The translations under genes and the position numbers were made by a program. The notes under the pieces are model-generated. The model did not search any database and was not told where the DNA came from. It saw nothing but the letters and a program-made list of their open reading frames with translations. Shown here piece by piece: positions 1,125 to 63,558 of a stretch of 64,000 nt of DNA (position 1 is the stretch's first letter; every line of letters begins with the position of its first letter). The stretch is from the NCBI GenBank assembly GCA_964035545.1, contig OZ037771.1:8673408-8737407 (forward strand), written 5' to 3'. Source of the stretch: Bugula neritina. Taxonomy: Eukaryota > Animalia > Bryozoa.

Positions 1125-1202
1125 CTTCTGACTGATTGGCACATTTACAGAGTTGAGCTAGCTTGTCATCTGTACCAACTGGACATCTGTTCACTACATA
1201 TC
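1125..1202 (-). CDS. Gene A exon 2 of Cys-rich family-B GPCR paralogue (GYVVNRCPVGTDDKLAQLCKCANQSE); not in the ORF track
   Basis: atgcag|GA...GAAG|gtaaag, 78 nt, phase 1-1, in frame with exon 1. Conserved with 31413-31490 while the flanking introns diverge. Confidence 0.85.
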
Positions 1203-2189
1203 CTGCATTAGAATCAGTAACATATTGATACTGCTTAGACAGGTATAAGATTCTAATGCATGAATTAAACAGCTATAGTCATATACTCATGATACTTCAT
1301 ACAGTGTCTTTAGTTTGATTGCATTTCATCATACAGATAAAAAACACCATGTAGAGGTGAAACTCTCGGAGACCTCCAAGACAGAAGAAGATAAAAAGTA
1401 ACTTCTACAAACACAGCCAATCAACGGAATATCTGTATCTATATAGAAAGGGTAAGTTGTTTTTGTTTAGAAATCTTTCAGAATGAGTTGCGTTGCTTAT
1501 TACATGGACCTTTCAAGGAATGCTGCTTTGCTATAATCTGCCAGACATGGGAAAAGAGGGTGTGTTTAGGAGATTTCAAAAAGCACCAAATGTCTAACTG
1601 CTGCACACACACATTTCACATAGTTTACCCATATTTTGCTGTAGTTCCAATCACAGAGCAGCATTTGGTTTAACTTTTACCAATTTTATTTGCAACTATA
1701 TGCTTTAAGTTGTATATATTGTAGCTGTGTAACAGCATAACCTTCATTAGCTGCGTTCAAGTCATTCTATTAAAAAGAAAGTTTCTAAACTTTAAGAATA
1801 AACCTGTTTGTCAAAACCCTGGCAGTCATAAATAGAAATAATATTATACTAGTTTCTTTACAAGTATATGGATTAAGTTGATATAAAATCTAAAACCAAG
1901 TAAACCATATACCTGTTTGGAAATATCTAATAAATTGGTGAGCTGTTGAGTGCTCACCATGTAACCTAATGCTGTTTCAAAGTCTCTCTGGTTCCTTTCA
2001 TAAGAACCATAGTTTATACACGGAATCTGCAGACCTTAACTGGTGGCGCAGTAATGGAAAAATTAAGAAAAGCTTGTGTGATGTAAAATATAGCGACATA
2101 AATTACGACCTCAAACCAAAATTCCTGTACAAGAAAATTAAAGAATTTAAATCATTGAAAATTACAGATTACTTTGTTTAAATGGGAAA

Positions 2190-2620
2190 TTGTGCTACTA
2201 GAAAATTTTCAGAGGTCACTGATATCTATTTTGCAGTTGAGAGTTGTGCCCTCTCAAAGTGAATAGGTTGAATCTTTGTATAAAGAGCAAGTTCATTAAA
2301 AGTTTGAAGTTTGGCTGCTACTTAAAATTCTAATTTTGCTATAGAATTGTTTCTTTAAGAGATAGGCATTTTAGTATAAGCAAATATATTAGCAGTTCAA
2401 TTAAAAATATTTTTTGTGAAAAATTTTGAAGTAAACTTGAACGCATTTTCATGGTTTTGGTTACTGAGAAATGCTGAAGTAGCACTTCAGCATTGCTCAG
2501 CAAACAAAATCACAAAAATGCGTTCAAGTTTATTTTGTTCAAAAATTTCCATTTTGGGAGGACACAACTCTTAATTCTAAGAGGGATCTAAAGAACTTCT
2601 GAAAAGGTCCTATTGCTCAA
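2190..2620. mobile_element. Degenerate palindromic (foldback) element in intron 1; internally deleted paralogous copy at ~39451-39640
   Basis: Inner hairpin centred ~2481 (aacttgaacgcatttt...gctgaagt / acttcagc...aaaatgcgttcaagtt). Outer arms ~2190-2260 and ~2550-2620 are approximately complementary. Confidence 0.55.
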
Positions 2621-4054
2621 GATTTGGAATATTGGAAACAATGGATACAGAACTAGGGTTAACATTAAACTTTTAATTTTAGGTGATTTTATTAACCAAT
2701 TATTGAATCAAATCAGGAGGATTAATAGAGATGTAGTCAGGTGTGGCTTAATATTACTGCATGTAACCTGCCAGCTAATACTATACTAGGATACATAACT
2801 TTATTATAGTAGTTATTTCCCCATTAAGGCAGAGTATAATGTAACCAGCACATCATTACCTGATTGGGTTTCTCACTCCTTTACACAGCCATAATAAACA
2901 TCTTTGATATATAAGTTGCTACTAAATAATATAACATAGTGCATATAATAACTACCTTAACTACCAGAGAAAAGCACATTATACTAACAATTTATGAGTT
3001 CAAAGTGATCAATTAAATGTGGAAATGGAGATTTGGCAGACTAATGCAGTTTGCTACAAGCTCACAGCTCACACCCTTCTGTTAGATTAGCCATGTCAAC
3101 ATTTGCTGTTGTAAGGCCTATGTGTAGAAAACTTTGGATACAACTTGGGGAAGTGTTAGATAACACACCCCAAAACTATTTCCAAAAAGTGTACTAGGAT
3201 GTACAAGAAATGTGCTATGTAGTTATATTCTACTACTTAAATAAATTATTCAATGCCGCTATAACTCACTAAAGACTTGCATAAATCAACTGCAACAAGT
3301 TGTTCTGTAGCTGCACTCTAATTGGCTAGTAAATTACTTCTCAGATAATGAAACTTTCTTGTTCAAAAGTATTAAACAGGAATGTGTTCATAGTAGAACT
3401 TATAACCAAATATTTATTAGCAAAAACAAGCTTTTCTATTAAGATACAGGCTAGATAACAATCAGCCAAGGAAGTTGACCAGCTTTGCTTATTTAACCTT
3501 TACCTGCCACATATTTAGCTGCTAAAAATAGATCTAGCAGCAAAGCCATGCTCATACTGTAACATTTAGACAGGTATATTTAGACTAGTGTAGGATATGC
3601 AACCACTGCAACTACAATAATGCTTATGTTGCCCAGGAGCTTTCAGTTACAGAGTTTTATATATTATTTTTCAAAAGTTCTTTTACTATCTGGTTTCATA
3701 CTTCATTAGGGCTATCAATTTTCAAAAAGCCAAGACATGTTATGTAAGCAAATGGAAAAGGCTTAATTTATACATGCATGTGTTTTATAATATGTGCTCT
3801 GTTACCTGCAAGAACTAAAATGATGAGAATAATTTATAATATGGCTTCAAATTCAGAGAACAAATCTGTACAACTAATGATCCCACTTAAAATATCACAA
3901 ACCACTACTTGAATGCTTTACAATATTCTGTCAGTAAAAATTACAATATTTCACTCAGCTTTGGTTTATATTAAGGAGTATATTTTATTATGCTATCCCT
4001 GCATGTTTTCCCTGAGTAAAATACTGCAGTAACTGAGGTGGAATTGAAACTAAC

Positions 4055-4337
4055 CTTGAGTGTTTCCTACGTTCATACATTGATAGGTCCCACGTTCCAG
4101 CCTCTCTCTAATCCTCACCACATCTCCACAACATTCGCCATAGTACTTGCACTCCTCTGATCTATCAATGTAGAAATCATTGCAGAACCTATCATTCTCA
4201 TTGTAGATTATCTTTGTTATGCTTCTGTTAGTCAAATTCTTACTAAACATGCCAATGTTTAGCTCTAACGACTCCACACTGTCCAAAACTGACAAGAGTA
4301 TTGGTAAGTAAACCAGGCAGTTGTATATCTTCATCAT
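4055..4337 (-). CDS. Gene A exon 1: signal peptide plus somatomedin-B-like half motif (CKYYGECCGD)
   Basis: ATG start, hydrophobic leader, donor CAAG|gttagt (phase 1). Paralogous to 41504-41786. Confidence 0.85.
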
Positions 4338-6769: not shown

Positions 6770-7587
<818 letters not shown>

Positions 7588-15598: not shown

Positions 15599-16281
15599 CC
15601 TTTATGTGATCAACTTTAAAGTTACGCAATTTTATGGCTCGTTAGAGTTTATCGCGAAAATTGCCAACAACTTTTGCATAAGTTTTAATTTCATTATTAA
15701 AAAGTTACACTAAATTTTGGCCTCATATAAACTAAGTATTATAATTTTAGAAATATTTTTTATTATAAAAAACTATTTAAAGTGACAGGAGATCGCATTT
15801 CTAGCTAAAATCAAGCATTTTGATATGACCTCTCAAAACCGCCATCTAAAAAATTGAAAATTGAAAAAGATAAAATAAATTTATAAGATAATTCAAAATA
15901 TTGTGACTTCAACATTTCTGTTTATATAAATGTTCTTTTAAATGTAATCTGAATAAATTAAATTGGCTCCGTATAATTTGACAGCAGTTTGTTGTATTTG
16001 AAAGTAGCGTCAAATTTTACAGCTAATTTTGAAACTTAGGGATCAAATTGAAAAGCAAATGGCTGGCTTAGTAGCTATTTATTTAATCAAATTTATTGAC
16101 TATTATTATCTAAAAATCACCAAGCCGCACCATCAACATTAATTATAAAAACTTTTAGGCTAAAAACTGGAAGTTTAAAGTAAGCGCTATTGTTTGTATA
16201 CGTAAAAGAGCATATTTGGTCTATTGATCTGTGGATGGTGTCCCGTAAAGGAACATATATGGTTCATTGATTGTTTAAGGA
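15599..16281. mobile_element. piggyBac-type non-autonomous element inserted in the Gypsy protease
   Basis: TTAA at 15595-15598 and 16282-16285. Removal restores NTNL-LSRQIFD. Degenerate TIRs cctttatgtgatcaa / ttgattgtttaagg. Confidence 0.75.
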
Positions 16282-17628: not shown

Positions 17629-17646
17629 ATCTCACCGCTGCCACCA
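17629..17646 (-). promoter_or_regulatory. Primer-binding site complementary to the tRNA-Leu 3' end
   Basis: Minus strand TGGTGGCAGCGGTGAGAT, 1 nt from the LTR. 17/18 match to the recalled tRNA-Leu 3' end ATCCCACCGCTGCCACCA. Confidence 0.8.
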
Positions 17647-19727: not shown

Positions 19728-20642
19728 CTACCTTATTTCTATGTTAACAACAGATGTTGTTACTGTTGATGAAGTAGCTTTGCTCTCTGAAGTAGTTATT
19801 TTAAATTTACTCCATGTTTTAACTGAAGTTACACAATTCCAACTAATGAGATTTGCACCAGTGATTAGCACACCTTGAGACTCTACGAAAATTTGCATGA
19901 TTAGCCACACTAAGTCATCATTGCTTGCCGTAGCTGCGAAAAGCATGATCCAGCCTAAGCCCAGACAAATAGAAACCTTGAAGCATGTAATAATGTTCTT
20001 TTTTAGCCTCACTTTATCCTGTTTTAAAGCAGCTGCACCTGCCCTGAATATTTTTACCATGACGACAATGCCTATTATACAATTTGTAACTATCAATATG
20101 TATATAGGCACAAGGTACAAAGCTAAACGTATGGTAGTGTCACCAAGAAAGCATACACCTGCACCACTGTAAATATCCTGGCTAATAGAGAGTTGACTAG
20201 TAGAGAGTATATATGTTATCATAGTGCAAACCAAAGGCAGTCCTAATGCATATACACTGAACAACACAAAAGGTTTATGTGACCTTGACACAAGTCTCAT
20301 GGAATATAAACTGCGCACTATACTAATTGCCATGCAGTTGCTCCACGTGAGTGATGCAAGAAAGAAGAACTGCGTAATGGCTGCTATAGCTTGACAACCA
20401 GCTTCGTCTCTCCCGATCGGTAAGTTTATAAGTGAAAAGCACAAAAGAGCCCCAAATAAGCAAATCAGAAGTGAAACCATCATAGTATCAGGTAAGCTGA
20501 GAGGCTTTTTCTTTCTCAGCATAATTAGAATAATGTTACAGACTATGGCAAAAAGGGAGGCACCCAGAAGAACATAGTCGTGAATTCCAAAAGTTAATTT
20601 TGGTCCAGGATTCAATGCTGTTGTGTTGATCACTTCAAGGAC
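19728..20642 (-). CDS. Gene B exon 10: whole 7TM domain and Ser/Thr-rich tail
   Basis: ttttag|GTC CTT GAA, phase 0; seven hydrophobic segments; family-B motifs. Confidence 0.92.
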   Translation of the reverse strand, partial: VLEVINTTALNPGPKLTFGIHDYVLLGASLFAIVCNIILIMLRKKKPLSLPDTMMVSLLICLFGALLCFSLINLPIGRDEAGCQAIAAITQFFFLASLTWSNCMAISIVRSLYSMRLVSRSHKPFVLFSVYALGLPLVCTMITYILSTSQLSISQDIYSGAGVCFLGDTTIRLALYLVPIYILIVTNCIIGIVVMVKIFRAGAAALKQDKVRLKKNIITCFKVSICLGLGWIMLFAATASNDDLVWLIMQIFVESQGVLITGANLISWNCVTSVKTWSKFKITTSESKATSSTVTTSVVNIEIR

Positions 20643-23600
20643 CTAAAACCACAAAGTATAGTGTTCTAGCGGTAACGTACATATTTAAATTGAATTGCCA
20701 TTCCAAATGACTTGAAGTTGTAATCTATGAATAGAAAGAACTTCAATATACACATATGTAAATAAAGGAGTGAAATGTTATATTAACATAAACAAGCTTT
20801 ATAAATAAAACTAAATATTTATCTCAAATAATTTCACTGTCGAAACTGATAAAATAATCTTGTAGCTATATAGTAGCTACAGGTAGGTTCTTGCTGTTAC
20901 ATTATAAAATACTTACGAGTGAGTGTGACAAAAGAAAGAATAAAAAACCTACCCGAAGCCCATTGGCTGAAAGTTGGATTTGTCTATATGCTTGGTTTGA
21001 CAACTGTGAGATTATGGATTTGTTGGAGCAGAACATAATAGAGTCATTTGAGCTTCTCCACATTGGAACTGAAGTTGTTTTTTCTTCTAGTGGATATCTT
21101 GCAATACCGAAAACTGCACTTCCAACACTGTGACCCGAAGAACCTGGCACATATACATTATCAGTTGGCAGTTTAGAGCTAGCATTCATTCCACCAGTTT
21201 CATTTGGAAAACACTGGTGCATTTCTTCGCCGCATAAGTCAGTGATAAGAAAGCCATTTGTGAAGACCGTACTATTTACCAATTCCTCCAAAATAAGTTC
21301 ACGTAAGACACTAGTTGAGTTGTCTATTTTACTGCACACAGATTGAGGGTCCTGTACACATCTTCCGCAACACTGCCAAGAGCTCAGTCTAATGGTTGTG
21401 ATATAACTACGCAGCGACACTTGAACTGATTCAGCGAATAAATCTTCTAGGGAGCCACCAGTCACAATTTCACCGTATTCTATTGGGTACTTTGAATCGC
21501 AGATGGCACAGAAGTAGTTGCGGAATACTATGTTATTGAAATATACAAATGAAACTGGTCCCCTCTCACAGTCCTCACTCAGCTTCCATTCTGAGTACAT
21601 GTCAGGACATTTGTTCCTATATGTTTTGCCCATTGGACATTCGTAGAAGTAGTCTGAGTCATCCAGTGACAATGTGTATGAGTCAAAATGACATTCTCCT
21701 CTGAAATACAAAAAAACCAATTTTAAAGTAATAATATAGATCTAGCAGCTTCAACTGATAATAAAAAAAACAATGGCGCCTAAAAAGGTGGTGTACATGA
21801 AGCACCAAAAAAGGTGCTAAATTTATGCAACAACTCACTTATTAACTACATTAATTTATTAACTATGTTAGCATGCACATAGTGCATTATATCATTAAGT
21901 TATTGTGTAGAAAAAGTATAACGTGAAACATTTTTAGCATTTCATGAAGTTTAACTTACACGATGTTACCAAGTTGATCCTGCTCACATTTCACTGCTAC
22001 ATCCCAGAATGTGGTGTTTGTGGCTTTATTGCATCTTGCACAGTGTATATTCTTATATCTGAAAAAATTATCAAGAAAATGGCAGTATTTTACTTTATTG
22101 ACTATACTAAAATAAGATTAAGAGCAAATGCTTTGTTTGCACTGAATATATTACTGTACTTGTAAGTCCCTACACAATAATAAATTAAAAAGATCAGTAA
22201 GTTTTGCTGAATAAGGTGTGCATCACATAGCTAAACAACTTCGCTGGTCAATTACAACAGTATAACTTGCCTAAGTATTTGAAATTTCATGATTTATTCA
22301 TTTGTAAATAACCCCACGGTGTTCCGTTACTCAACCACAAAGTCCAAATATATACATTAGACAACATACGTCAAACGAGTGTTCATGTCAAGGACGAGCC
22401 AGCCATAGAGACTCCATTCCCCAACATCCCCCATGGAACACTGAGATTTCTCTTCAACACTGGCTTCCTGTGGGCAAGAGGTGACAACTACTGTCCCTGT
22501 TATAGCAGACCTGTATACATCATAACAAACCCAGTCCATTCTCTCGTCAGGGTCACGCATTTCCACTTCAACATCTTGGCAGCAGGTTCCAAAATATTGA
22601 CATCTTTGATCACACCTTTGAAACAGAGCAATACAAACTACACTCACCTGTCTATTGGTGCATGTCTATAAACTGGGAAACCATCACCATAAAACAATCA
22701 TATTTCAAGTATTTCTGTAAAATAAACGCCAAACTATGTTGTTACATGGTGAGATTGATAAAAAATATGTAGGTGCCAACACTTACTCGCAGTTTTTGTA
22801 TTGAGTCGTTACACCACATAAACTAAAATATTTAGCTATTTCAGCTACAGTCCATAGAAACGTTCTCTGCATCTGAACTTGAGGATCATAGGAGAAGTCC
22901 TCAACTCTCACACAAGAATTGGACAAGTCTTGGACGTGGTTGTAAGCACAGCCAGGGCCAGAGCATTGAATGGAATCTGTTGCTTCGGGGAACATAATTA
23001 GTTTTCCACACACGCTGCTGTAGTCACTCAAGCAATACATACTTCCTAAGTCCCACATCTTTGGTACCTCTACTGTCAAATTATAATTATTTACAGATTA
23101 TTATATTATAAACACACTGTTTACATCATGAGCAGCAGTGTATGCATATACACTAGAGAACCAAATAGTTCAACATTGACTCATCGTTGAGATTTTGTGC
23201 TCACAACATTATTTACTAGCAGCCCATGTTTCAACATTGAGTGAATGGCTTTAAGAGAGCAAATGATAAAATACATAATAACACATAATAAATTCATATA
23301 TTTGGGAGTTTTTTCTTATATTGGATTTAAGGCCCTTTGTTTATAATGTTGGGAGACAAGCAGAAATGAGGCTAGGATATCAGACATCTTTTAGCATAGC
23401 TTGGTATGCCTCAAAGACTGTTTCTAGCTTTTTATTTGCTGAAAATAGTCACTATGTTCCCACTGCCTCACATTATGGAAATGAATGTTTTTTCTATGTT
23501 TGGGAACAGTTGCATGGAATGAAATCACAACCATAGGTTAATGCAAACCGCAACTACAAATCCCTTCATGTAGGATCAATTCGTTGTTATGGGAACTCGT

Positions 23601-26600: not shown

Positions 26601-29476
26601 TCTCTGGTGAGCCCCTCGAATATTTGGATTGGAAAGTAGCATTTGAAGGTCTCATTGAGAGTGGTAGTTACAATCCCCTCCAAAAGATAGCTCTTTTTCA
26701 ATAATATTTAAGTGGTAAAGCCAAACGGATGGCAGCAAATTTGTTCCAAATTGACACTGAAGAAGCATTTAAAGAAGCATAACGCAAGCTAAATGATACA
26801 TTTGAAAAACCCCGCATACTCACTGAGGCATACCGGACCCATTTAGAACAGTGGCCCCTTATTAAAGAACACGACGGGGAGGCTCTGGACAAACTGGTCA
26901 ATTTTTTAGAATTTTGCCAAACCGCCATGAACAAGCTTCCCGAACTCAACTGCCTTAATGATCAAAGAGAAAACGAGAAGATTCTTGCAAAATTACCAAT
27001 ATCGGTAGGCAATCGTTGGGTCAAAATGGCAATTGAAATAGAATCAGCAACAGACCGGTTTCCATCAATATTTGATTTTGTTTGGTTCTTGTCTAAAAAG
27101 GCTGGATGTAGCAAGAAACAGTCTAAACAAAGCCATAGCCAAAAGAGTCGTGTCAATTAGAAACCATGATAACAGCCATAAGCGGAATTAACCTACTCGC
27201 AAGCCTGATAAGCAGACAGCAACATTTCTTGCCTCAGAAAATCAAGTCACACCAGCTAACATACCACATGGCCTCTCAAAACCTAAGTGTGGGTATCCAT
27301 GCCTGATGTGTAACATGGACAACCATGGCATTGGCATCTGTTTCAACCGTGAAAAATTACCTCATTCAGACATAGAGACATTCTTTGACAATAATAACCT
27401 TTGTTATTCTTGTGCAAAGCCGGGACACAAAATAGATAAATCTCGCCACCCTGCGATATGCACTAAAAAGGACTGTGAACAAAAACATCTTGCTGTGTTC
27501 CACAAGTACTACAATAGAGGCAGTGAAAATAAGACCTTTCAACCAAATAAACAATCCAATAACAAACAAATTTGTGGCAGAAAAAATAAGCCCTCCACTC
27601 AAAACTCAACTTCCAATACAGGTATGGTGAATAAAAAACCTTTTAACTAAACAAACACAATAATCCAAACTCAAATCAAAGCAACGAAAATAAGCCAACA
27701 CCAGCCACTGCATGTAACTGCGCCGAAAATAAGACAGCATACCTCGCCTCATGGACCATTCCAATGTATGTATCATCAATAGAAAATCCCGACCATGAAG
27801 TCCTAATATATGCTCTACTAAACTCTGGTTCTAACCACACATTCATTACTCATGACACTATTCATACACTCAATGCTACTACTCATGATATCAGGTACCA
27901 GGGCGCAATGCCCCAGTTTTTTCATCACAAAAATTTCGTTATTTTAAGGGTTGTGTAAGAGATAGAAACAACAAAGTGATACCTATAATAGACAATAAAG
28001 AATGACTTACATGCCCACAGATAAGTCTTGTTATACGCGTAGGTCATGTTGAAGTTGTTTGGCCATGATATATACATGTGGGAAAGCTTGTTGGGAATTC
28101 TGAAATTTTCATCTGACAGCTGGTCTTTTAATATACTTTTTAAAACAGGTTTAACAATTGCCAACCACACTCCTACAACATGATGGGTCAACTTTTGCTA
28201 TGAGAATAATTTTCATCATTTTGAAGAAAAGAATTAATAATCTAGATAAGTAACATGTTGCACATCTATTGAGTAATATAATTATGTTGTATATCAATTA
28301 GATATTATATTATTATATGTCATATGTTAAAAGCTACAATCAAGTTGTTTTTAGATGCAGATATCGTAAGCAGAGGAACAGTTGAACCAGTATATATAAC
28401 ATATATATAACATACATACCAGTTGGAAACTCTGGGAAAATAAGATTTGGAACACCCAGCTCATCAGATTCTCTCCAACACCATTCACAAAATACGTTTC
28501 TATAGAGGTATGCATCAGAGGACTGATTCTGGTAATTATAAACTGGTCCAAACTCGCACAGCCGTCTAATCTCTTCATTGCCATAAGTTTGTGGACATTT
28601 GTTAATATAGTGACTACAGTCTGCTCTGTGGACATCAATTTCTGTAGCAACATGCTTCACCCAACAGTCTCTATATCAAATAAACCAGTTATGTTAACGG
28701 CACCAATCAGGGACTAGATATCATATCAGCAGCACCAATTAGGGTTTAAGTACAAAACTTGTCTTCATTAAAAACAATAATTGATTTCACAGTGCCGTGT
28801 TGTTAATAATGTAAAAAAATGTAAAATATGCAGAACTTCATCTTACTTAAAAAGTTACTAAGTTTGATTTTGATTTCAAGTTTGTAAAATATTGTTGCTG
28901 TGCCAAGACTTAGGACCTAGATCTCAGCATAGCCTGCGCTTTACAATATTTTATACTATGCTGAAAACTAATTAGAAAACTTATGATAGTCACAAAAATG
29001 CATTTCTAACCCCATTAGCATAAAATTATTCTATATAAATGGTATATTATACTTGCACATCTTACGTATGTTTCTATAATATGTGTAATGTATAATATAT
29101 GTGTAATAGAATAAATTAGGCAGAGAACATAACTGTTCGTATGAAGAGAGATAAGAGAAGTTTTTTAGTGCTAGTAAAGTGGTATTTATTGTATTATGTG
29201 TAGATGCTTCTGCCAAGAGCTCACAGTTGTAGAATGAACTAAAACTGAGAGCATGTCTCTCTATATAGTGCAAAAACATTTGTTCCAGAAAGTTCAGCAG
29301 ACATTAGGTCCTGGTCCTGGTTTCTAATCGAAAGTCAATAAACTATTCACTACTCTAAGAGCTTAACTATAATTACAATATTTAAGGCATTCAGAAAGCT
29401 ACCCCAAGAGTTAATTATAATAATGATAACAACAACAACAACAACAACAACAGCAGCAGCAACAGCAACAACAAAC

Positions 29477-29507
<31 letters not shown>

Positions 29508-31229
29508 CGCAAATAGTTACTAGAACTTTTCAGAACACCTTATTCAACTTCAAAACACTTTATGTGATAAAAACTTTCAAGAGCCATTACACTATGTGTG
29601 TAACTTGACATATAATATGTAATGTCTGTCAAATGTCACTATAAAAGACAGGAAAGTTGTCAACTTCTATTAATAAATTGTAATTAAAAGTTCTAACTTT
29701 AAATAATATTTAGAGGACTTGCTCCGTACTTGCAGTTACTGATCAGCTAGGAACAAGCCAAAAATACGGAGGTAGGTGCAGTAAAATTTATTGAGAATAA
29801 ATATTTAAGGCTATTGGGAAGGTAAAATATGTTCAAAAGATAGTTTCAGACCTGTACAATTTATCATATCAAAGGAGTTGTGCCCCCAACTATGTTGGAA
29901 TCCTCAGAGCTTATATAACAATGAGCTCCACAATAAAAGCTCACCTTTGTCTCAGCAAGTTTTGCAACATAAGAACGTCAAATTTATTGTTCTCTATTTC
30001 TTGAATAGTCTCGTTGGTGCAGTAAATCTGTGTGGTCCAAAACTCTATGGCAAGCAGAGGGTCAAATGGAAGCATAGGACCACCAAAATTTGGGTTTAAT
30101 GCTCCATTACATATTGCACAGTACATGTTACTGTAGGTAATACCAGTGAATGTTCCAGTCACAGGCCACTGCTCTATAATGGCTTTCTTTGGTGAACAAC
30201 CTAAAATATAACATTATTCAGGCTACATTAGCTTTGAATCAAACTATTTAGAGAAGAATACTGCATTAATAACAAATGGGTCTGATCTCTATATTTAATA
30301 TTAATTATAATGTGTGATTCATTCAGTAGCATACATAACCATTATCATATGACACTAAAACAATAAGTGTCATCAAAGATAAAGAAGCAAAATTATACTC
30401 AGGCACCACAAATATAAAACCCCTCAAAAAGGCATAAGCAACGTAAGGGAAGGAACATGCGCAACTAAATTCAATACAGTGATGTGATGGGTTTAGGTTG
30501 GCAGTGGTTGGAAAATACCAAAATCGTTTGCAACAGCAGTAGCTTTGCAGTTTGCGTAGAAAGTTTATGCCCCAAATGGCAAGATAACAAGAGACATCTG
30601 TAATATATTTCATGTTATACAAGATTATTATATATTATATTGTTAATACCTACTGCATATTCAATACCATATATCTATGATCTAATGAACAAAAGAGTTA
30701 GTTAGGTCTACAGCATTAATGAGCATAAAACACTGAAGTTAAAAACTCTTTTCTTTAGCCTATACTATAGCCATTATAGCACTGCAGTGTTATCTGCCAA
30801 AACGATAAGGAGACAACAAAGAGGATTACATTGGATTAGTAGGCTAAAACTTTGTCACCAAACTCACTCTAGCAGAAGAGTTGAACAGTCTGACATACAT
30901 AAATATTCTAGTAGCTAGGTTGATTTTATGGAGACCCAAGGTCACACTCTTCAAGAAAAATATAGTGTTTAGATTTAATAAATGAGTGTGGCTTTCTGAT
31001 AGCTAAAGTTTCCTCCAAGTGTGAAGCTGCTGTACATCATCTGCAAATCAGATTAAACCCCTGTGAATAGTTATTCAACTTGTTGGCCTACTTCAGTCTA
31101 TATTATATTAAAACGCTTTGGGCAGGTTCTTTGTTAAATAGTATTTAGATTTTAGAGGATAGGAATGTGAGCCCCTTGTGCTTTGGTGCCTCTGGAGAAA
31201 ACTATTATGTGGCAGATTGTGTTGTGAGA

Positions 31230-31277: not shown

Positions 31278-34200
31278 TTGCAAGTCTGTTTCAGGTACAC
31301 TTGTGGTCTGAGGTTCCTCTTGTAAATGCTAGTATATTGAATTTGATAGTAAATTAGAAGAAAAGCAGAATGTCTGATCAGAATAAAATTATAGTACTGA
31401 AAACTACTTTACCTTCTGACTGAGTAGCACATGTACAGAGTTGAGCTAGCTTGTCATCTGTACCAACTGGACATCTGTTCACTACATATCCTGCATTAGA
31501 ATCAGTAATATTTTGATGCTGCTTAGACAGGTATAGGATTCTAATGCATGAATTAAACAGTTAGTCATATACTCATAATACAACACCATGCAAATGTCAA
31601 ATTTTCGGAGGTCTCCAAGACAGAAGCACCGAGAGAAAGTAACTCCCACAAACACAACCTGACAACAGAATATCTATAGCTAAAGTTGTTTTTGTTTACC
31701 AATCTGTCAAAATGTTTATAATATTATAGACTTTTCAAGGAATTCTGCTTCGCTATAATCTGCCAAACATGAAAGGAGAGGGTGCATTTAGGAGATTTTA
31801 AAAAGTACTAAATGTCCAACTGTTGCACACATACATTTCACGAAGTTTCACTCACATTTTGTAGTAATTCTAATCTGCACAGAGCAAAATTTGGTTCAAC
31901 TTTTATTAATTTATTTTGCCACTATATGCTTAAAATTGTATATATTATAACTGTGTAACATCATAAGCTTAATTAGCTGTGTTCAAGATACTCTATTAGA
32001 AGGAGAGTTTCTAAACTTTAAGAATAAATCTGGTTGTTAAAACCCTGGCTGTCACATAAATATAAACAATATTATACTAGTTTCCTTACAAGTATCTGGC
32101 AAGTTGAAATAAAACCTAAAACCAAGTAAACTATATACCTGTTTGGAAATATCTAATAAATTGGTGAGGTGTTGAGTGCTCACCATGTAACCTAATGCTG
32201 TTTCAAAATCTCCCTGGTTTCTTTCATAAGAACCATAGTTTATACACTGAGTCTGCAGACCCTAGCTGGTGGTGCAGTAATAGAGAAATTAAGAAAAGCT
32301 TGTGTGGTGTAAAATATAGCGACATAAGTTAAGACCTCAAACCAAAACTCATATATATAAGAAAACTGAAGACTTTAAACCAGGGCTGTCCAACAGGCGG
32401 CCCGCGGGCCGGATCCGGCCCTCCAGCTATATTTGTGTGGCCCCCCAAGGTATAGCAAGTTACAAATTTTTGTTTATCAAATTTGCTAACTAGCCTGTAA
32501 CAGCAGCACATGGGATAGTTGAGAGCATCCCACTAAGAATTTCTATTAAAATGTAGTTCAAGTTCTTCTACAATATTGTTCTGTGGGTGGCATGCGTGTT
32601 GCCTACTTGTCATCGTTTAGCCTGAGATTAAACTACAACTAATAACAGCAAGCTAGTCATTATAGTCTGTTAGCTAGCAAGCCTGTGACTTATAGTAATG
32701 TAGACGCCTATATTATATTCTCAACTCTACGTGTTCACTGAAGTGTGAAGGGATGCACAGTGCTTACTACTTAAAAAGAAATATACCATTTCCAGTATAT
32801 AAATCCATAACTTATATAAAATCTAAAAGTCATTGCTTTTTTTCAGATATCATGTTTTCCTGCTAAGATATTTTACTGGTGCTAAAAATAAACTTTTGAG
32901 GCAAAATTAACCAAAACTGTGCAGTTTTTTTTCTATAGCTTTGCAAAAGAATGAAAAAACTCCAAAAATGTTGCACTGAAAAAAAAAGATTCACAACATA
33001 GTTTTTAAATTTTAATTCTAGTAGCCTACAATTAAATGAGATTATTTTTACTGGTACTGAATTTGTACACAGTTACAATGCAAACCTCAGCAAGGCAGTT
33101 GCAGCTAAAAAATTACCTGTAACTATCCTGTGCAGACAGATATTTTAAAGACATTTAATCAGGACTGGCCATATAGAGACAAGACTTTTTTGAAAGTATA
33201 ACTAAGATATCATTTTTATTGATTGTAATGTGAAAGATAAGTAGTTGAAGAATCTCTGACACACTTCACTTATGCAGTACTAAAGTATTATTGTGTATTT
33301 GTTCGTTTTCATTTACACTCTGTTTTAAGGTTAGATGCCTAAACAATTTTGTTTTTGTTACCTGCAAGTGCAAATTAATACGAGAGTCAGACTCAAAAAC
33401 AAATAACGGAGACTAGCAGTAACTTATAATAATGATTATAATAATAATTATAATAATAATACGAATAATAATATATGAGTATATCGACAGCCCCAAGCTG
33501 TCACCGTGACCTCCAAACCACCCCTTAGTCACCCCAATCTCCACCCGTGATCTGCCCAGCAAATCACCGTATTCGCCCAGAATACAATGACTAGAAACTT
33601 GAATTTGCTAAACTCTCTAATAGATATAAACGTTCTCAGTCGAACACTGTCACACGATTCATTGAGGCTTTTGTTTCGCAGCGCAGCACAAGGAGAAATC
33701 CTTGACCCCTGCTGTGTACCTAAGCACTCTATCTTGCTACGCCGCTAACGGCATCGGCATACTTACAGCCCACATCTCCCCTAGCTTCTTACAAAGCTAC
33801 TAGGGAAACGCCACGACCTCTGGCCAATCAACATAATCAGCCAAGTACGCAGGTCGCCGCCGCACACGTTGCGGCCGTCCATGATGGAGCAGCGGCACAT
33901 CTGCATTCTCGCTCTCCTCAGCATCAACTCCAACCTGTTCGGTGGGGCGTTCTGGACACCTTACATCATTCACATCGGCATCGGGTTGGGCTGGGTCTTC
34001 CCGAACAGCATACTGACCCGCATTGGCCTCCTCGCCATGCTCCTCGCTCAACACTAACGGTAGATCCCCTGGAGGCCCAGCATAGCGTATATGCTGATCA
34101 TCAACACGAGCAGAGAGGCCACCCTGATGGCGCCTTCCACCGTGCTGAGCAAGCTCTCCACCATGGCGACGCTTTCGCACGTCTCTGACATGCCGTGGTA

Positions 34201-40200: not shown

Positions 40201-41786
40201 CTAGCTAATTCCATACTATCATATAACCTGCCAGCTAATACTAATAGTATATAATTTTATTATAGTACTTTATTTCTCAAGTAAGGTGGAATACAAGATA
40301 CCTAGCACATCATTACCTGATTGGGCTTCTCACTCCTTTACAATGTCATAATAAACACCTCTAATACAATTGCTACTAAATAATATAATATAGTGCATAT
40401 AATAACTACCTTAACTACCAGAGAGAAGCACATTATACTAACAATTAATGAGTTCAAAGTGATCAATTAAGTGTGGAAATAGAGATTTGGCAGACTAATA
40501 CAATTTGCTACAAACTCACAGCTCACACCCTTCTGTTAGATTAGCCATGTCAACACTTGCTGTTGTGTGTGTAGAAAATTTTGGGTACAACCTAGGGAAG
40601 TGTTAAATGACACGCCCTAAACCATATCCATAGAGTGTTGGGTTTTCATGTTTGATAATATATATTTATATATATATATATATATATTTATAAATATATA
40701 CATATCAATATTTTAAAGATTTTGAAGTTATTCTGTAGCTGTACTCTAGTTGGCTAATAAATTACTTCTCAAACAATAAGACTTTCTCGTCCAAAAATAT
40801 TGCAGAAATGTTGTTAGTAGAACCAACCAAGTATTTACTGGCAAAAACAAGCTTTTCTAAGACCATGTAAATAACTTATGAACATGTTAGACAAAAATCA
40901 GCCAAAGAAATTGACCAGATTTGCTTATTTAACCTTTACCACTTACCACATATTTATTTGCTAAAAATAGATCTAGCAGCAAAGCCATGCTTATACTGTA
41001 ACATTTAGACAGGTATATTTAGACTAGTGTGGGATATGCAACCACTGCAACTCCAAGAATGATTATAAAGCCAAAGAACTTTCAGTTAGCTACAATTTGT
41101 TTTTCTATATTATTATTCAAGAGTTATCTTTCTTGACGAGCTAGTTATATAATTTAATAGGGCTAAGAATTTTAAGAAGTCAAGGCATATTATACAAGCT
41201 CATGGAAGTGTTTCAATTTATACTCAACCTAATATTTATAACATGCCCTGTTACCTGCAGGGACTAAAGTGAGAATAATTTAAAATATGGCTTTAAATTC
41301 AGAGAACAAATCTGTGCAGCGAATGGTCCCACTTATGGTATAACAAAGCAACTACTTGGATACTTTATATTATGATTGTAATTAGAGTAACAATATTTTT
41401 CCTCAGTTTTGGTTCATATAGAGATTTCTATTTTAAAATGCCTCAAGTTTACTCTTCAATTTGAGTAAAATATTGCAATAACTGAAGTGAGATTAAAACT
41501 AACCCTGAGTGTCTCCTATGGTCATACACTGATAGGTTCCATGTTCCAGCCTCTCTCTTATCCTCACCACATCTCCACAACATTCACCATAGTACTTGCA
41601 CTCTTCTGCTCTACTAATGTCTAAACTATTGCAGAATCCACCATTCTTGTTGTAAATTATAGTTGTCATGTTTCTGTTAGTCAAATTCTTACTAAACATG
41701 CCAATGTTTAGCTCTAGAGACTCCACACTGTCCAAAACTGACAAGAGAATTGGTAAGTAAACAAGGCAGTTGTATATCTTCATCAT
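19728..41786 (-). CDS. Gene B: complete adhesion/Methuselah-like family-B GPCR, 1107 aa; join(41786-41504,31490-31413,30200-29945,28670-28420,28172-28011,23072-22787,22615-22370,22058-21960,21700-20953,20642-19728)
   Basis: All introns GT-AG, phases match (1,1,2,1,1,2,2,2,0), total 3324 nt. Signal peptide, SMB-like motifs, four CP..C..YxNxxCxxC modules, and 7TM with 7tm_2-like motifs (CQAIAAITQFFFLASLTW, LGLP, VPIYILIVTN, LGLGW, SQG). Confidence 0.85.
20953..21700 (-). CDS. Gene B exon 9 (Cys module 4 and stalk)
   Basis: tttcag|AGGA...CGG|gtaggt. An alternative in-frame donor exists after 20917. Confidence 0.85.
21960..22058 (-). CDS. Gene B exon 8 (TYKNIHCARCNKATNTTFWDVAVKCEQDQLGNIV); not in the ORF track
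   Basis: ttttcag|A...GT|gtaagt, phase 2-2; completes the YxNxxCAxCN motif. Confidence 0.85.
22370..22615 (-). CDS. Gene B exon 7 (SMB-like CDQRCQYFGTCCQD and start of module 3)
   Basis: caaag|GTGT...AC|gtatgt. Confidence 0.88.
22787..23072 (-). CDS. Gene B exon 6
   Basis: gacag|TA...GA|gtaagt; joins exon 7 to give KNCECDQRC. Confidence 0.85.
24931..27897. mobile_element. Rearranged BEL/Pao remnant in gene B intron 5 (LTR 24931-25580 minus; pol piece 25581-26008 plus; gag/PR 26010-27897 plus)
   Basis: PTVFSGEPLEYLDWK (DUF1759-like), zinc knuckles CMCNMDNH / CYSCAKPGH / CTKKDCEQKH, PR-like YALLNSGSNHTFIT. Paralogous to 56040-62778. Confidence 0.85.
28011..28172 (-). CDS. Gene B exon 5
   Basis: ttgtag|GA GTG TGG...GCA T|gtaagt, phase 1-1; conserved in gene C. 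Confidence 0.75.
28420..28670 (-). CDS. Gene B exon 4 (Cys module 2)
   Basis: atatag|A GAC TGT...ACT G|gtatgt. Confidence 0.87.
29428..29508. repeat. (ACA)n trinucleotide microsatellite
   Basis: Direct reading. Confidence 0.9.
29945..30200 (-). CDS. Gene B exon 3 (WPVTGTFTGITYSNMYCAICNG)
   Basis: ttttag|GT TGT...CAA AG|gtgagc. Confidence 0.87.
31234..31271. repeat. (GT)n microsatellite
   Basis: Direct reading. Confidence 0.9.
31413..31490 (-). CDS. Gene B exon 2 (GYVVNRCPVGTDDKLAQLCTCATQSE)
   Basis: atgcag|GA...GAAG|gtaaag, 78 nt. Confidence 0.85.
33800..37111 (-). CDS. pol: Gypsy Pol (PR-RT-RNaseH-IN), probably expressed by -1 frameshift from gag
   Basis: LVDTGS, RPVMDYRELN, DLKSAYLQI, YIDD, WTDAS, HHCC zinc finger, D-D-E. 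The frame is open upstream of the ATG at 37021 as far as the slippery site. Confidence 0.93.
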   Translation of the reverse strand, partial: SGGGCNSGRRILQHGYHSLGVNRRGPCSLSMSEVLSGACVPRDSLALSGAISRTTTSSRMPVIQAVLNGRCFSCLVDTGSERTLVSPRVVGGKRLKAGRPLLTADGSASHVEGTCRVTVGLQGHCFSVSAPVMSELGNLGVDCLIGGDAIDHMGGVTVRRGSDSRYSVVWGKQSSAGCCDFPRQKVASPGLACGATTAVNDNRSSDLGSLQVEDPDFVANFDNGRWTVSWRWTGESPSKLQTRVSEYRCTQAPQIHERYCAELESWISKGWLKRWEGPVEGVIPLLAVFQPTKDKVRPVMDYRELNNYVESHTGDDKVAVCSEKIRKWRQLKGNLRVVDLKSAYLQIHIAKDLWKYQVVRHKGVHYALTRLGFGLSCAPRIMTSILGKVLSMDDRVRRATDHYIDDIVLQESVVGAEEVRKHLAKYGFETKEPESLDGGRLLGIALKSDSRGELRMMRATALSEIHLKLKSLTKRGLFSLCGRLVGHYPVAGWLRMHCSFLKRLGCGGGWDAPVGDAVSNLAAELLNRAKREDPVRGCWRVNPGGSVTVWTDASSIGIGMVLEVDGNVVEDASWLRKESDHSHINVAELEAVARGINLAVTWGFKTFTLAIDSLTVVNWMGNTVDARSRVRTKSAAEMLTKRRLGVIRDTITEFDLEISVRFVPTAENKADCMTRVAKQWLGSRGLGSTDMQVTAALSTGESVEDAIWAAHLPHHLGVDRTLYLARQIRRDLSREQVKRELAGCETCQRVDPALRSENIVPTGSLSVEGNWQRVAIDVTHYDGRLFLSMVDCGPSRLAIWRRLQSESAEKIVAQLRSVVVERGPCEELLLDNSMAFRSASVEEFADEWGISLRFRAAYAPSGNGIVERNHRTIKRIAERGGISPEEATFWYNVTPRKDADEGSVPSNVLFRYPWRVPFDINAPEAGVCGDCNFAIGDEVWLKPPTPSCTRQWALGKVTGVVSRHTVCVNGVPRHVRDVRKRRHGGELAQHGGRRHQGGLSARVDDQHIRYAGPPGDLPLVLSEEHGEEANAGQYAVREDPAQPDADVNDVRCPERPTEQVGVDAEESENADVPLLHHGRPQRVRRRPAYLADYVDWPEVVAFP
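37054..38058 (-). CDS. gag: Gypsy Gag with two CCHC zinc knuckles
   Basis: CYRCGGAHRVKDC and CFRCGGIDHWVRDC, FTGDG..WIREFE. Start could be the ATG at 38058 or at 38121. Confidence 0.9.
   Translation of the reverse strand: MSREGEKIEGEDSPGESSAVGGASDLGGPSSAGTGLAAPVLLDARVLASILNQAKGPILSRIRQATPQFTGDGSVDVTAWIREFEGLCEVEQIAPTEILIYMLGGNAARVYSRMRVAEASQWDVVKAALVAEYAMPMQEAWRRFITCRMEDGDTIDVYLDRLERFGGRVGMTCNDLSFRAQFYEGLPASVYEWAVTLESAYKADFGSVLARVRERVVSRRAVARRSRSGQQSGEVAAASGRAQQQSGASSCYRCGGAHRVKDCTESRRASFNKRPVRNSSGKRAGCFRCGGIDHWVRDCPKPPAVAAGLEGNQPGFQAEDATRGAASSNMDTTV
37075..37117 (-). promoter_or_regulatory. -1 programmed ribosomal frameshift signal (G GGU UUU plus 9-bp stem-loop)
   Basis: Slippery heptamer in gag frame, 5-nt spacer, GGAGGATGC-13nt-GCATCCTCC. 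Pol is in the -1 frame. Confidence 0.85.
39785..40255. repeat. 28/30-bp minisatellite with 146-bp higher-order period
   Basis: Units ctagtatataacctaccagctaatacta / ...aattccata. A variant unit recurs at 39924, 40070 and 40216. Confidence 0.9.
41504..41786 (-). CDS. Gene B exon 1 (signal peptide, SMB-like half motif)
   Basis: ATG...CAG G|gttagt; first 38 aa identical to gene A. Confidence 0.87.
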
Positions 41787-45435: not shown

Positions 45436-45608
45436 GCAAAGTCTTATGTCAATACTGTGCTATAAGAACTCTGTACTTTACCTAAATATGCAGGTAAAAT
45501 TATAGTAACCAGCCAAGAATAGCAAAGATTACCTGCAAATCTTCCAATTTAATTATATTTAGCAGCAGTACAATGCTTATAGACATCATGACCACAGGCT
45601 AAAATTTC

Positions 45609-49338: not shown

Positions 49339-49341
<3 letters not shown>

Positions 49342-49422
<81 letters not shown>
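49342..49422. repeat. (AT)n microsatellite; paralogous tracts at 19486-19510 and 50338-50453
   Basis: Direct reading. Confidence 0.9.
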
Positions 49423-49427
<5 letters not shown>

Positions 49428-49640: not shown

Positions 49641-49745
49641 CTACCTTATTTCTATGTTAACAACAGATGTTGTTACTGTTGATGAAGTAGCTTTGCTCTC
49701 TGAAGTAGTTATTTTTTATTTTTAAACCATGTTTTAACTGAAGTT
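49641..49745 (-). pseudogene. Orphan copy of the gene-B-type C-terminal coding tail downstream of gene C
   Basis: Matches 19728-19830 (ITTSESKATSSTVTTSVVNIEIR*), but its upstream junction is non-coding 3' flank sequence. Confidence 0.85.
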
Positions 49746-50603: not shown

Positions 50604-51509
50604 TCATGTCATTTCTATGTTACCAGCAGATGTTGTTGAAGTAGTTTTGCTTTTTGAAGTAGTCATTTTAGATTTACTCCATGTTTTGATAGAAGTCACA
50701 CAACTCCAACTTATGAGATTTGCACTCGCTATTAGCACGCCTTGAGATTCTACGAAAATTTGCATGATTAGCCACACTAAGTCATCATTGCTTGCTGTAG
50801 CTGCAAAAAGCAAGATCCAGCCTAAGCCCAGACAAATAGAAACTTTGAAGCATGTAATAATGTTCTTTTTTAGCCTCACTTTATCCTGTTTTAAAGCAGC
50901 TGGGCTCGTATTGAATATTTTTACCATGACCACAATGCCTATTATACAATTTGTAACTATCAATATGTATATAGGCACAAGGTACAAAGCTAGACGTATG
51001 GTAGTGTCACCAAGAAAGCATACACCTGCACCACTGTAAATATCCTGGCTAATAGAGAGTTGACTAGTAGAGAGTATATATGTTATCATAGTGCAAACCA
51101 AAGGCAGTCCTAATGCATATACACTGAACAACACAAAAGGTTTATGTGACCTTGACACAAGTCTCATGGAATATAAACTGCGCACTATACTAATTGCCAT
51201 AGAGTTGCTCCACGTGAGTGATGCAAGAAAGAAGAACTGTGTAATGGCTGCTATAGCTTGACAACCAGCTTCGTCTCTCCCAATCGGTAAGTTTATAAGT
51301 GAAAAGCACAAAAGAGCCCCAAATAAGCAAATCAGAAGTGAAACCATCATAGTATCAGGTAAGCTAAGAGGCTTTTTCTTTCTCAGCATAATTAGAATAA
51401 TGTTACAGACTATGGCAAAAAGGGAGGCACCCAGAAGAACATAGTCGTGAATTCCAAAAGTTAATTTTGGTCCAGGAATCAATGCTGTTTTGTTGATCAC
51501 CTCAAGGAC
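50604..51509 (-). CDS. Gene C exon 10 (7TM)
   Basis: Paralogue of 19728-20642. Confidence 0.92.
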   Translation of the reverse strand, partial: VLEVINKTALIPGPKLTFGIHDYVLLGASLFAIVCNIILIMLRKKKPLSLPDTMMVSLLICLFGALLCFSLINLPIGRDEAGCQAIAAITQFFFLASLTWSNSMAISIVRSLYSMRLVSRSHKPFVLFSVYALGLPLVCTMITYILSTSQLSISQDIYSGAGVCFLGDTTIRLALYLVPIYILIVTNCIIGIVVMVKIFNTSPAALKQDKVRLKKNIITCFKVSICLGLGWILLFAATASNDDLVWLIMQIFVESQGVLIASANLISWSCVTSIKTWSKSKMTTSKSKTTSTTSAGNIEMT

Positions 51510-63500: not shown

Positions 63501-63558
63501 ACTACAGCCTCTTCTGTGGACATGAATTTCTGTAGCAACATGCTTCACCCAACAGTCT
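50604..63558 (-). CDS. Gene C: family-B GPCR paralogue, exons 4-10; join(63558-63308,63053-62892,54184-53899,53727-53482,53170-53072,52803-52065,51509-50604); 5' end is beyond the window
   Basis: Same splice sites and phases as gene B, open frames, in-frame 9-nt deletion in exon 9. Confidence 0.85.
52065..52803 (-). CDS. Gene C exon 9
   Basis: tttcag|A...CAG|gtaggt. Confidence 0.85.
56040..62778. mobile_element. BEL/Pao complex in gene C intron 5: LTR 56040-56696 (-), PPT, pol remnants 56750-58922 (-), LTR 58923-59576 (+), gag/PR ~60290-62778 (+)
   Basis: ~655-bp inverted TGTAGTG...GTTACA repeats, PPT AGGTGGGAG, HFGVYHSKKPGKI, FYVDD, GIDCFG, DQGTHF motifs; stops and deletions. Confidence 0.9.
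63308..63558 (-). CDS. Gene C exon 4
   Basis: Paralogue of 28420-28670, same splice sites. Confidence 0.85.

What the first reader, a model, noticed from the sequence alone, without database searches (positions are those of the whole stretch)
21474..21645. Hypervariable patches confined to modules 2 and 4 of near-identical paralogues
Seen: B versus C differ at 20 of 57 aa in module 4 (exon 9; C ~52577-52748) and at 12 aa in module 2 (exon 4), with every Cys retained. Exons 6-8 (~210 aa) differ at only about 2 aa and the adjoining introns are almost identical. The variable modules occupy the same position (second module) in each half of the ectodomain. Inference: diversifying selection or exon-scale gene conversion at a ligand-binding surface, as expected of an immune, allorecognition or chemosensory receptor repertoire. 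This is the best candidate for an undescribed system here.
Basis: partly seen in the sequence, partly recalled or inferred. Interest (0 to 1): 0.8.

Follow-up and report, generated by a model that had tools for sequence, protein, structure and literature searches.

The report
Gene-conversion mosaic in bryozoan receptor genes
Two neighbouring, almost identical copies of an unstudied moss-animal (Bugula) surface-receptor gene differ sharply in a 200-base stretch, most likely because that stretch was copied in from sister genes and so has a different ancestry; a burst of adaptive mutation is not demonstrated.

Summary
The core observation is real. Copy B (21474-21645) and copy C (52577-52748) differ at 19 of 57 residues, all Cys are kept, and the flanks are about 99% identical (P about 1e-28 against the local rate).

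Two details are wrong. The stretch is not an exon; it lies inside a 748-nt exon (21700-20953). Divergence spikes are also not confined to modules 2 and 4.

The genes are five clustered paralogues of a roughly 1053-aa orphan family-B (7tm_2-like) GPCR. Its ectodomain holds four Cys-rich modules of the uncharacterised DUF8401 type. Full-length relatives were found only in bryozoans (Bugula, Watersipora).

Synonymous divergence in the patch rises in step with replacement divergence: dS is 0.28 against 0.018 next door, and omega is 0.62. None of the 18 informative sites groups B with C. Instead they form runs that join C with E, C with D, or B with D. The AU test rejects a B+C clade in the patch (p 0.024). 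The 7TM exon shows a stronger exchange (p 6e-6).

The best reading is a mosaic made by interlocus gene conversion on loops under relaxed or type-specific constraint. Diversifying selection is not shown.

The parts
21474..21672 (-). Hypervariable tract in copy B, inside exon 8. It covers the loops of Cys-rich module 4: the C2-C3 loop, the hairpin turn and the tail after the last Cys.
   Evidence: 32 B/C mismatches in 199 bp against about 1% in the flanks. dS 0.276, dN 0.171.
52577..52775 (-). The same tract in copy C. It is composite: E-like at B coordinates 21672-21628, D-like at 21539-21530, A-like in places, plus about 10 private changes.
   Evidence: Site table, split patterns, trees.
20953..21700 (-). 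Exon 8 of gene B: module 4 (DUF8401-like) plus a stalk of about 170 aa.
   Evidence: AG acceptor at 21702-21701 and GT donor at 20952-20951, conserved in five paralogues. tblastn with Watersipora proteins.
52065..52803 (-). Exon 8 of gene C, 9 nt shorter in the stalk.
21105..21170 (-). Third coding divergence cluster between B and C, in the poorly structured stalk. The changes are mostly private to C and include a 9-nt deletion.
   Evidence: Stalk Nd 12 against Sd 1. pLDDT below 50.
28420..28670 (-). Exon 4 of gene B (module 2). The variable tract is 28434-28636.
   Evidence: 23 mismatches in 203 bp.
63308..63558 (-). Exon 4 of gene C (module 2), with 12 aa differences from B. Eight codons are private to C, four of them changed by adjacent-doublet substitutions.
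19728..20642 (-). Exon 9 of gene B: seven-helix domain plus tail. From about 20080 downwards it is D-like.
50604..51509 (-). Exon 9 of gene C. Its 3' third and 3' flank are A-like (1-2% divergence from A).
   Evidence: Tree (A,C) 99/98; B+C rejected at p 6e-6.
49641..49745 (-). Left-over B-like copy of the 3' end of exon 9, downstream of C's A-like end. This is the footprint of the exchange.
41504..41786 (-). Exon 1 of gene B: start codon, signal-peptide-like N-terminus and the first SMB-like CC motif.
31413..31490 (-). Exon 2 of gene B (first half of module 1).
29945..30200 (-). Exon 3 of gene B (second half of module 1).
22787..23072 (-). Exon 5 of gene B (Cys-rich linker).
22370..22615 (-). 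Exon 6 of gene B (second SMB-like motif and first half of module 3).
21960..22058 (-). Exon 7 of gene B (second half of module 3).
53072..54184 (-). Exons 5-7 of gene C with their introns (54184-53899, 53727-53482, 53170-53072), 99.1-99.5% identical to B.
1125..4337 (-). Exons 1 (4337-4055) and 2 (1202-1125) of gene A. The rest of A lies to the left of the window.

Best explanation
**The genes.** The window holds parts of three tandem genes (A, B, C). Two more copies (E, D) lie about 150 kb away on the same contig. All five encode a roughly 1053-aa, nine-exon orphan family-B GPCR. The ectodomain is built of two halves, each with an SMB-like CC motif and two Cys-rich DUF8401-type modules. A stalk without a GPS motif and a 7TM domain follow.

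**The duplication.** B and C come from a tandem duplication of a unit of about 30-38 kb. They are now 93-96% identical overall and about 99% identical around exons 5-8.

**The patch.** The 200-bp tract in module 4, and a similar one in module 2, have a different ancestry from their flanks. Short-tract interlocus gene conversion among the clustered paralogues has shuffled old, paralogue-type-specific loop variants. C's tract therefore carries E-like, D-like and A-like runs. It also carries changes that are seen in another species' copies or in none. These tracts fall on the loops that vary across the whole family. Constraint there is weaker (omega about 0.5-1 against about 0.3), so imported differences persist.

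**Shown versus inferred.** Shown here: the gene model, the mosaic ancestry, the raised dS and the intact reading frames. Inferred: that conversion is the mechanism, its direction, and that the loops contact ligand.
For: - **Gene model.** Nine exons, all GT-AG, sum in frame, intact in five paralogues. The model is collinear with Watersipora subatra RefSeq proteins.
- **Patch rates, B against C.** Sd 7.5 of 32.5 sites and Nd 22.5 of 147.5 sites give dS 0.276 and omega 0.62. The rest of exon 8 has dS 0.018 and exons 5-7 have 0.025. Fisher p is 2e-5.
- **Differing sites.** Of 34 sites in 21672-21474, 19 are shared with A, D or E, 11 are private to C and 4 are private to B.
- **Informative sites.** All 18 in the patch contradict B+C, and they fall in runs: CE against AB, then BD against ACE, then CD against ABE.
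- **Trees.** The patch tree joins C and E at 93/92, and the AU test rejects B+C (p 0.024). B and C are sisters 200 bp downstream. The B-C path length is 0.19 in the patch and 0.01 downstream.
- **Recombination tests.** PHI-type test: exon 8 p 0.005, exon 9 p below 0.0005.
- **Independent exchange in the 7TM exon.** C's 3' part groups with A (99/98) and B's with D (93/90). B+C is rejected at p 6e-6. A duplicated remnant lies at 49641-49745.
- **Old variants.** Several 'C-private' bases (21626, 21538, 21511, 21474) occur in copies from another bugulid sample.
- **C is constrained elsewhere.** Outside the patches its private changes give omega about 0.32.
Against: - No single donor for C's whole tract exists among the five copies in this assembly.
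- About 10 changes are private to C and about 9 of them are replacements. This is compatible with neutral drift or with positive selection acting on top of conversion.
- With ten sequences the AU test weakens to p 0.08. For the module-2 patch it is p 0.052.
- Counts are small: about 33 synonymous sites in the patch.
- Import into C cannot be told apart from homogenisation of the flanks with the patch left out.
- No reads were available, so expression, splice junctions and the reality of the tandem duplication rest on sequence alone.
Confidence: 0.7

Rival explanations
1. Diversifying (positive) selection on new point mutations since the B/C duplication created the patches at a ligand-binding surface, without any sequence import.
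For: - Replacements cluster in homologous loops of modules 2 and 4 while every Cys and the core motifs are kept.
- C-private changes are nearly all replacements: about 9 N to 1 S in the module-4 patch, and 8 codons to 0 in module 2.
- Patch omega is about twice the background.
Against: - dS in the patch is about 15 times that of the flanks (Fisher p 2e-5).
- Omega is at or below 1 in all ten paralogue pairs in the module-4 patch, and 0.33 in the D/J50 orthologue-like pair.
- More than half of the differing sites are shared with other paralogues in runs.
- A spike of the same size lies in non-coding intron 4.
Confidence: 0.1
2. The patches are old divergence that escaped homogenisation. B and C are older duplicates whose exon 5-8 region was recently homogenised by B-C conversion, and selection kept the module loops from being overwritten.
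For: B/C divergence is 3-4% over most of the unit but only 0.9% across 21701-23600 and 1.0% just downstream of the patch. This suggests a recent homogenising tract around it.
Against: - Patch divergence (16%) is four to five times the 3-4% age of the unit, so more than escape is needed.
- In the patch C groups with E, not as an early-diverged sister of B.
- This is a sub-scenario of the same conversion process rather than a true alternative.
Confidence: 0.12
3. B and C are two haplotypes of one locus wrongly laid in tandem by the assembler, so the patch is allelic polymorphism.
For: - Flank identity of 99% is within the range of marine-invertebrate heterozygosity.
- A 16-bp satellite (44463-45437) sits at the B/C unit junction, which is a place where assemblies can go wrong.
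- I could not test this with reads.
Against: - There is no gap in the window, and A, B and C form a periodic array with homologous spacers.
- The two units differ by at least five large insertions and deletions. Among them are a 5.3-kb LTR element in B's intron 1, a 4.2-kb insert in C's intron 4, a 3.4-kb insert upstream of C, and an intron 2 of 9.3 kb in C against 1.2 kb in B.
- C's 3' end is recombinant with A.
- The other pair, E and D, is also tandem.
- No haplotig copies of any of the five genes exist in the assembly.
Confidence: 0.06
4. A local mutational process, such as clustered multi-nucleotide mutation from error-prone repair, hit these stretches.
For: Four of the eight C-private codon changes in module 2 are adjacent-doublet substitutions. 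Clusters also occur in non-coding DNA.
Against: This does not explain the runs of sites shared with E, D and A, or the variants shared with another species.
Confidence: 0.04

Closest known systems
Mosaic evolution by interlocus gene conversion in clustered receptor genes (for example the plant RPP8 NLR family, bioRxiv 10.1101/694240, abstract seen; from my own knowledge, vertebrate MHC and KIR clusters)
   Same: Tandem paralogues; short exchanged tracts; variation concentrated in the recognition part; incongruent trees along one gene.
   Different: This is a seven-helix receptor with only five close copies. No omega above 1 and no population polymorphism data are available, and a recognition function is not shown.
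Family-B (7tm_2) GPCRs, adhesion/secretin type (for example ADGRL3 and ADGRG6 structures)
   Same: The seven-helix exon aligns to ADGRL3 (E 3e-5) and ADGRG6. Language-model neighbours are 7tm_2 clusters. The intronless paralogues hit Pfam 7tm_2 at E 8e-12.
   Different: B's own 7TM exon gives no Pfam hit at E up to 1. No GPS/GAIN, HRM or other known ectodomain family is found.
DUF8401 (PF28443) proteins of molluscs and arthropods, often joined to 7tm_2 and Somatomedin_B
   Same: Module 4's nearest Atlas clusters, by features (0.89-0.90) and by shape, carry DUF8401. hhalign to the N-terminal domain of Bugula receptors, one of which is annotated PF28443, gives probability 92% and E 6e-7.
   Different: Here there are four modules in two duplicated halves on a protein of about 1050 aa, an architecture I found only in the bryozoans Bugula and Watersipora. 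The function of DUF8401 is unknown, and no paper mentions it.
Diversifying somatic gene conversion from pseudogene cassettes (review PMC3924843, abstract seen)
   Same: Short templated tracts change a receptor's variable loops.
   Different: There are no stand-alone donor cassettes: the genome has exactly five copies of the tract, each in an intact gene. Nothing points to a somatic process.

Membership tests
Family-B GPCR (Pfam 7tm_2) | The seven-helix domain matches the 7tm_2 profile | tested here: inconclusive
   B exon 9 alone gives no Pfam family at E up to 1. It aligns to ADGRL3 7TM chains (E 3e-5). It aligns to intronless paralogues (tblastn E 1e-30) that do hit 7tm_2 (E 8e-12). Atlas neighbours are 7tm_2 clusters.
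Adhesion GPCR | GAIN domain with a GPS autoproteolysis motif before TM1 | tested here: not met
   No GPS or GAIN hit in the exon 8 or exon 9 translations. The stalk is poorly modelled (pLDDT 40-60) and has no structural match.
DUF8401 (PF28443) | Match to the PF28443 profile | not testable with these tools
   The profile is absent from the local Pfam copy. Indirect support comes from Atlas feature and shape neighbours and from hhalign to a domain of a PF28443-annotated protein.
Receptor surface under diversifying selection | dN/dS above 1 in the variable patch, with dS not raised | tested here: not met
   B/C omega is 0.62 with dS 0.276 against 0.018 in the flanks. The module-4 patch gives 0.28-0.99 over ten pairs. 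D/J50 gives 0.33. Only pairwise NG86 counts were made; site models were not run.
Interlocus gene conversion / ectopic recombination mosaic | Tree topology changes along the gene with sharp borders | tested here: met
   AU tests; the sliding distance table; informative-site runs.
Interlocus gene conversion / ectopic recombination mosaic | Significant clustering of compatible sites (PHI- or GENECONV-type tests) | tested here: met
   PHI-type permutation test: exon 8 p 0.005, exon 9 p below 0.0005. Sawyer-type runs: A-B 20 sites at 21670-21623 (p 0.009), A-C and B-D at the 3' end (p below 0.001). These are my own implementations, not the published programs.
Interlocus gene conversion / ectopic recombination mosaic | An identifiable donor for the tract | tested here: inconclusive
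   There are E-like (21672-21628) and D-like (21539-21530) runs, but no copy matches C's whole tract. Only five copies exist in the genome.
Cassette-templated somatic diversification (Ig/VLR-like) | An array of partial donor cassettes near the expressed gene | tested here: not met
   DNA and protein searches of the whole genome find the tract only in the five intact genes.

The most novel reading that the evidence does not exclude
The DUF8401 loops of modules 2 and 4 are the ligand-specificity determinants of a bryozoan-specific GPCR recognition repertoire, serving for example settlement cues, symbionts or colony self/non-self. In this reading, short-tract conversion shuffles loop variants that selection keeps for longer than the species have existed. 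That would be an MHC- or NLR-style diversity mechanism on a seven-helix receptor.
Probability: 0.15. Interest if true: 0.7.

Novelty: new member of a known kind. Interest (0 to 1): 0.35.

Why it matters
The result turns an apparent hypervariable immune-type patch into a documented case of short-tract exchange between clustered paralogues. It also shows that a replacement-rich patch between near-identical copies is not evidence of positive selection unless synonymous sites and the other paralogues are checked.

It gives a first gene model and domain map for an uncharacterised receptor family, built of SMB-like motifs, four DUF8401 modules and a 7TM domain. In this form I found the family only in bryozoans. 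It points to the loops that distinguish paralogue types as the place to look for ligand specificity.

No function is shown, so the practical value is as a lead for expression and ligand studies in Bugula.

Tried and rejected
- **Pfam on each exon translation:** nothing significant, including for the 7TM exon.
- **PF28443 as a genome-search family:** not in the library.
- **The look-up of sequencing runs:** Expression, splice junctions, depth and polymorphism are therefore untested.
- **Fold searches with the exon-8 model and the module-alone model:** no Foldseek hit at E up to 0.001, and best VIA Z of 3.8 and 2.4 (weak Kazal-like rows only). This does not show that the fold is new.
- **Literature:** nothing on bryozoan family-B GPCR expansions, Bugula adhesion GPCRs or DUF8401.
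- **A possible 18-nt mini-exon (22665-22648) and an upstream alternative acceptor for exon 7:** both are in frame, but neither is used in the Watersipora proteins, so I left them out of the model.
- **First long MAFFT run:** it timed out. The automatic alignment that replaced it has doubtful intron columns, so I rely on the per-exon alignments for the tests.
- **Codon-level lineage-private counts:** too small for significance.
- **Joined protein:** the spliced protein was never joined for any search or fold. Every search was made exon by exon, by reference. dN/dS was summed over per-exon codon alignments with split codons dropped.
Full report
**What is there**

The window is eukaryotic, about 35% G+C, and intron-rich. 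It is G000:C7:8673408-8737407 of a 216-Mb genome. An intronless relative of the gene found elsewhere in this genome is 79-94% identical to Bugula neritina proteins. The organism is therefore B. neritina or a close bugulid; earlier notes of this scan say the same.

A self-comparison shows a tandem duplication. B (15762-29113) matches C (45604-64000) at about 96%. The homology continues to B 44139 and C 83448 at 93-95%. A third, older unit (A) starts at the left edge of the window.

**Gene model**

Each unit carries a minus-strand gene. I defined the B model from three sources:
- open frames;
- five-way alignments of the paralogues;
- collinearity with full-length Watersipora subatra RefSeq proteins of 1085-1157 aa, all named 'uncharacterized protein'.

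B has nine coding exons:

| Exon | Window coordinates |
|---|---|
| 1 | 41786-41504 |
| 2 | 31490-31413 |
| 3 | 30200-29945 |
| 4 | 28670-28420 |
| 5 | 23072-22787 |
| 6 | 22615-22370 |
| 7 | 22058-21960 |
| 8 | 21700-20953 |
| 9 | 20642-19728 |

All introns are GT-AG, and the exons sum to 3162 nt in frame. The same exons are intact, with conserved splice sites, in A, C and two further copies, E and D, at 8.50-8.54 Mb on the same contig. An LTR retrotransposon (33355-38676) lies in B's intron 1.

The joined protein was never handed to any tool. All searches were exon by exon, by reference.

**What the protein is**

- **Seven-helix part.** Exon 9 aligns to the 7TM domains of ADGRL3 and ADGRG6 (E 3e-5 to 2e-4). 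Its language-model neighbours are 7tm_2 clusters. The exon itself gives no Pfam hit, but about 20 distant paralogues exist, many of them intronless genes of about 700 aa, and two that I scanned do hit 7tm_2.
- **Ectodomain.** It has no Pfam match and no GPS motif. It consists of two halves, each with an SMB-like CC motif (weak Somatomedin_B hit, E 0.024) and two Cys-rich modules.
- **Modules.** Modules 2 and 4 are homologous. Module 4 is homologous to the N-terminal domain of the intronless receptors (hhalign probability 92%, E 6e-7). One of those receptors carries the precomputed label PF28443. Atlas neighbours by features and by shape name that family DUF8401, found in molluscs and arthropods, often with 7tm_2 and Somatomedin_B.
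- **Range.** An exhaustive HMMER search with exon 8 found only 36 representatives at E up to 0.001 among 1.84 billion. The named ones are all from Watersipora.
- **Structure.** AlphaFold2 models the module well (pLDDT 85-93 over residues 21-70) as a small helix-plus-hairpin disulfide fold. It has no convincing solved relative.

**The observation**

- 19 of 57 aa differ, or 20 of 58 with the next codon;
- 12 aa differ in module 2;
- 2 aa differ in the 207 codons between the two modules;
- all Cys are kept.

The tract 21474-21672 has 32 mismatches in 199 bp, against 0.9-1.0% on either side (P 1e-28).

Two points do not hold:
- 21474-21645 is not an exon. It is part of exon 8.
- The spikes are not confined to modules 2 and 4. 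They also occur in the stalk (21105-21170), in the 3' third of exon 9, in exon 3 (7 aa), and in non-coding intron 4 (26700-26999, 11.3%).

**Selection or mosaic ancestry**

NG86 counts for B against C:

| Region | dS | dN | omega |
|---|---|---|---|
| Module-4 patch | 0.276 | 0.171 | 0.62 |
| Rest of exon 8 | 0.018 | - | - |
| Exons 5-7 | 0.025 | - | - |
| Module-2 patch | 0.188 | - | 0.66 |
| Rest of the coding sequence | - | - | 0.29 |

- The excess of synonymous differences in the module-4 patch is significant (Fisher p 2e-5).
- Over all ten paralogue pairs, omega in the module-4 patch is 0.28-0.99.
- I also compared exon copies from another bugulid, taken from JGI samples 3300002729 and 3300003318. 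The orthologue-like pair D/J50 has omega 0.33 in the patch, lower than in the next 87 codons.
- Constraint in the loops is nevertheless weaker than elsewhere. The replacement fraction exceeds the background expectation (p 0.048) and does not differ from the neutral expectation (p 0.23).

**Evidence for exchange between paralogues**

- **Site sharing.** Of the 34 sites that differ between B and C in 21672-21474, 19 are shared with A, D or E, 11 are private to C and 4 are private to B.
- **Runs.** None of the 18 parsimony-informative sites groups B with C. They form consecutive runs: C with E (21672-21628), B with D (21604-21603), C with D (21539-21530).
- **Trees.** The ML tree of the patch joins C and E (93/92), and the AU test rejects B+C (p 0.024). 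The next 330 bp of the same exon place B and C as sisters. With ten sequences the B-C path is 0.19 in the patch against 0.01 downstream, although the AU p rises to 0.08.
- **Permutation tests.** A PHI-type test is significant for exon 8 (p 0.005) and exon 9 (p below 0.0005).
- **A cleaner case in exon 9.** Its first 560 bp give B+C (100/99). Its last third gives A+C (99/98) and B+D (93/90), with B+C rejected at p 6e-6. C keeps a duplicated B-like remnant of the exon end at 49641-49745.
- **Old variants.** Several bases that looked private to C occur in the other species' copies, so at least part of C's tract is old variation rather than new mutation.
- **No cassettes.** The genome has only five copies of the tract and no stand-alone donor cassettes.

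**What remains open**

- No sampled copy matches C's whole tract. About ten changes stay private to C and are almost all replacements. In module 2, four of the eight private codon changes are adjacent doublets. This could come from an unsampled donor, from relaxed constraint, or from some positive selection on top of conversion.
- The very low divergence around the patch (0.9% against 3-4% for the unit) suggests that B-C homogenisation also took place. Import and escape cannot be separated with one genome.
Against the artefact stand the periodic A-B-C array, at least five large insertions or deletions between the units, C's recombinant 3' end, and the absence of haplotigs.

**Verdict**

This is a real feature. 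It is best explained as a gene-conversion mosaic on the family's variable loops, in an uncharacterised receptor family whose four-module architecture I found only in bryozoans. It is a new member of a known kind of process. A recognition-repertoire role is possible but untested.

Noticed in passing
window 33355-38676: An LTR retrotransposon lies inside intron 1 of gene B. It is G+C-rich (53-57%). Its 420-bp LTRs differ at one base, so the insertion is recent.
   Followed up: partly
window 44463-45437: A satellite of about 54 or more copies of a 16-bp unit sits exactly at the junction between the B and C duplication units.
   Followed up: no
window 6869-7538: A perfect 6-bp microsatellite of about 670 bp with strong C-over-G skew, upstream of gene A.
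   Followed up: no
window 48733-50631: C carries a tandem duplication of about 1 kb of the region downstream of exon 9: an A-like copy next to the gene and a B-like copy beyond it. It appears to be the scar of the A/C exchange.
   Followed up: partly
window 56040-60885: C's intron 4 has an insert of about 4.2 kb that includes an inverted duplicate (59576-58497) of sequence present once in B (24931-26006).
   Followed up: no
window 26036-27650 (+): Intron 4 of B holds transposon-like open frames, one with a zinc-knuckle-like Cys/His pattern. The B/C divergence spike at 26700-26999 lies here.
   Followed up: no
window 22665-22648 and 22105-22059 (-): Two optional pieces keep the reading frame: an 18-nt candidate mini-exon between exons 5 and 6 (splice sites kept in all five paralogues) and an upstream alternative acceptor for exon 7. 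Neither is used in the Watersipora homologues.
   Followed up: partly
G000:C2:6.30-6.39 Mb (L011, L012): A cluster of at least nine intronless genes of about 700 aa for receptors with one N-terminal DUF8401-type domain and a 7tm_2 domain. Two carry an in-frame stop.
   Followed up: partly
window 12000-18000: A G+C-rich block (44-50%) between genes A and B with retro-element open frames that look integrase-, RNase H- and gag-like. Its right part (from 15762) belongs to the B/C duplicated unit.
   Followed up: no
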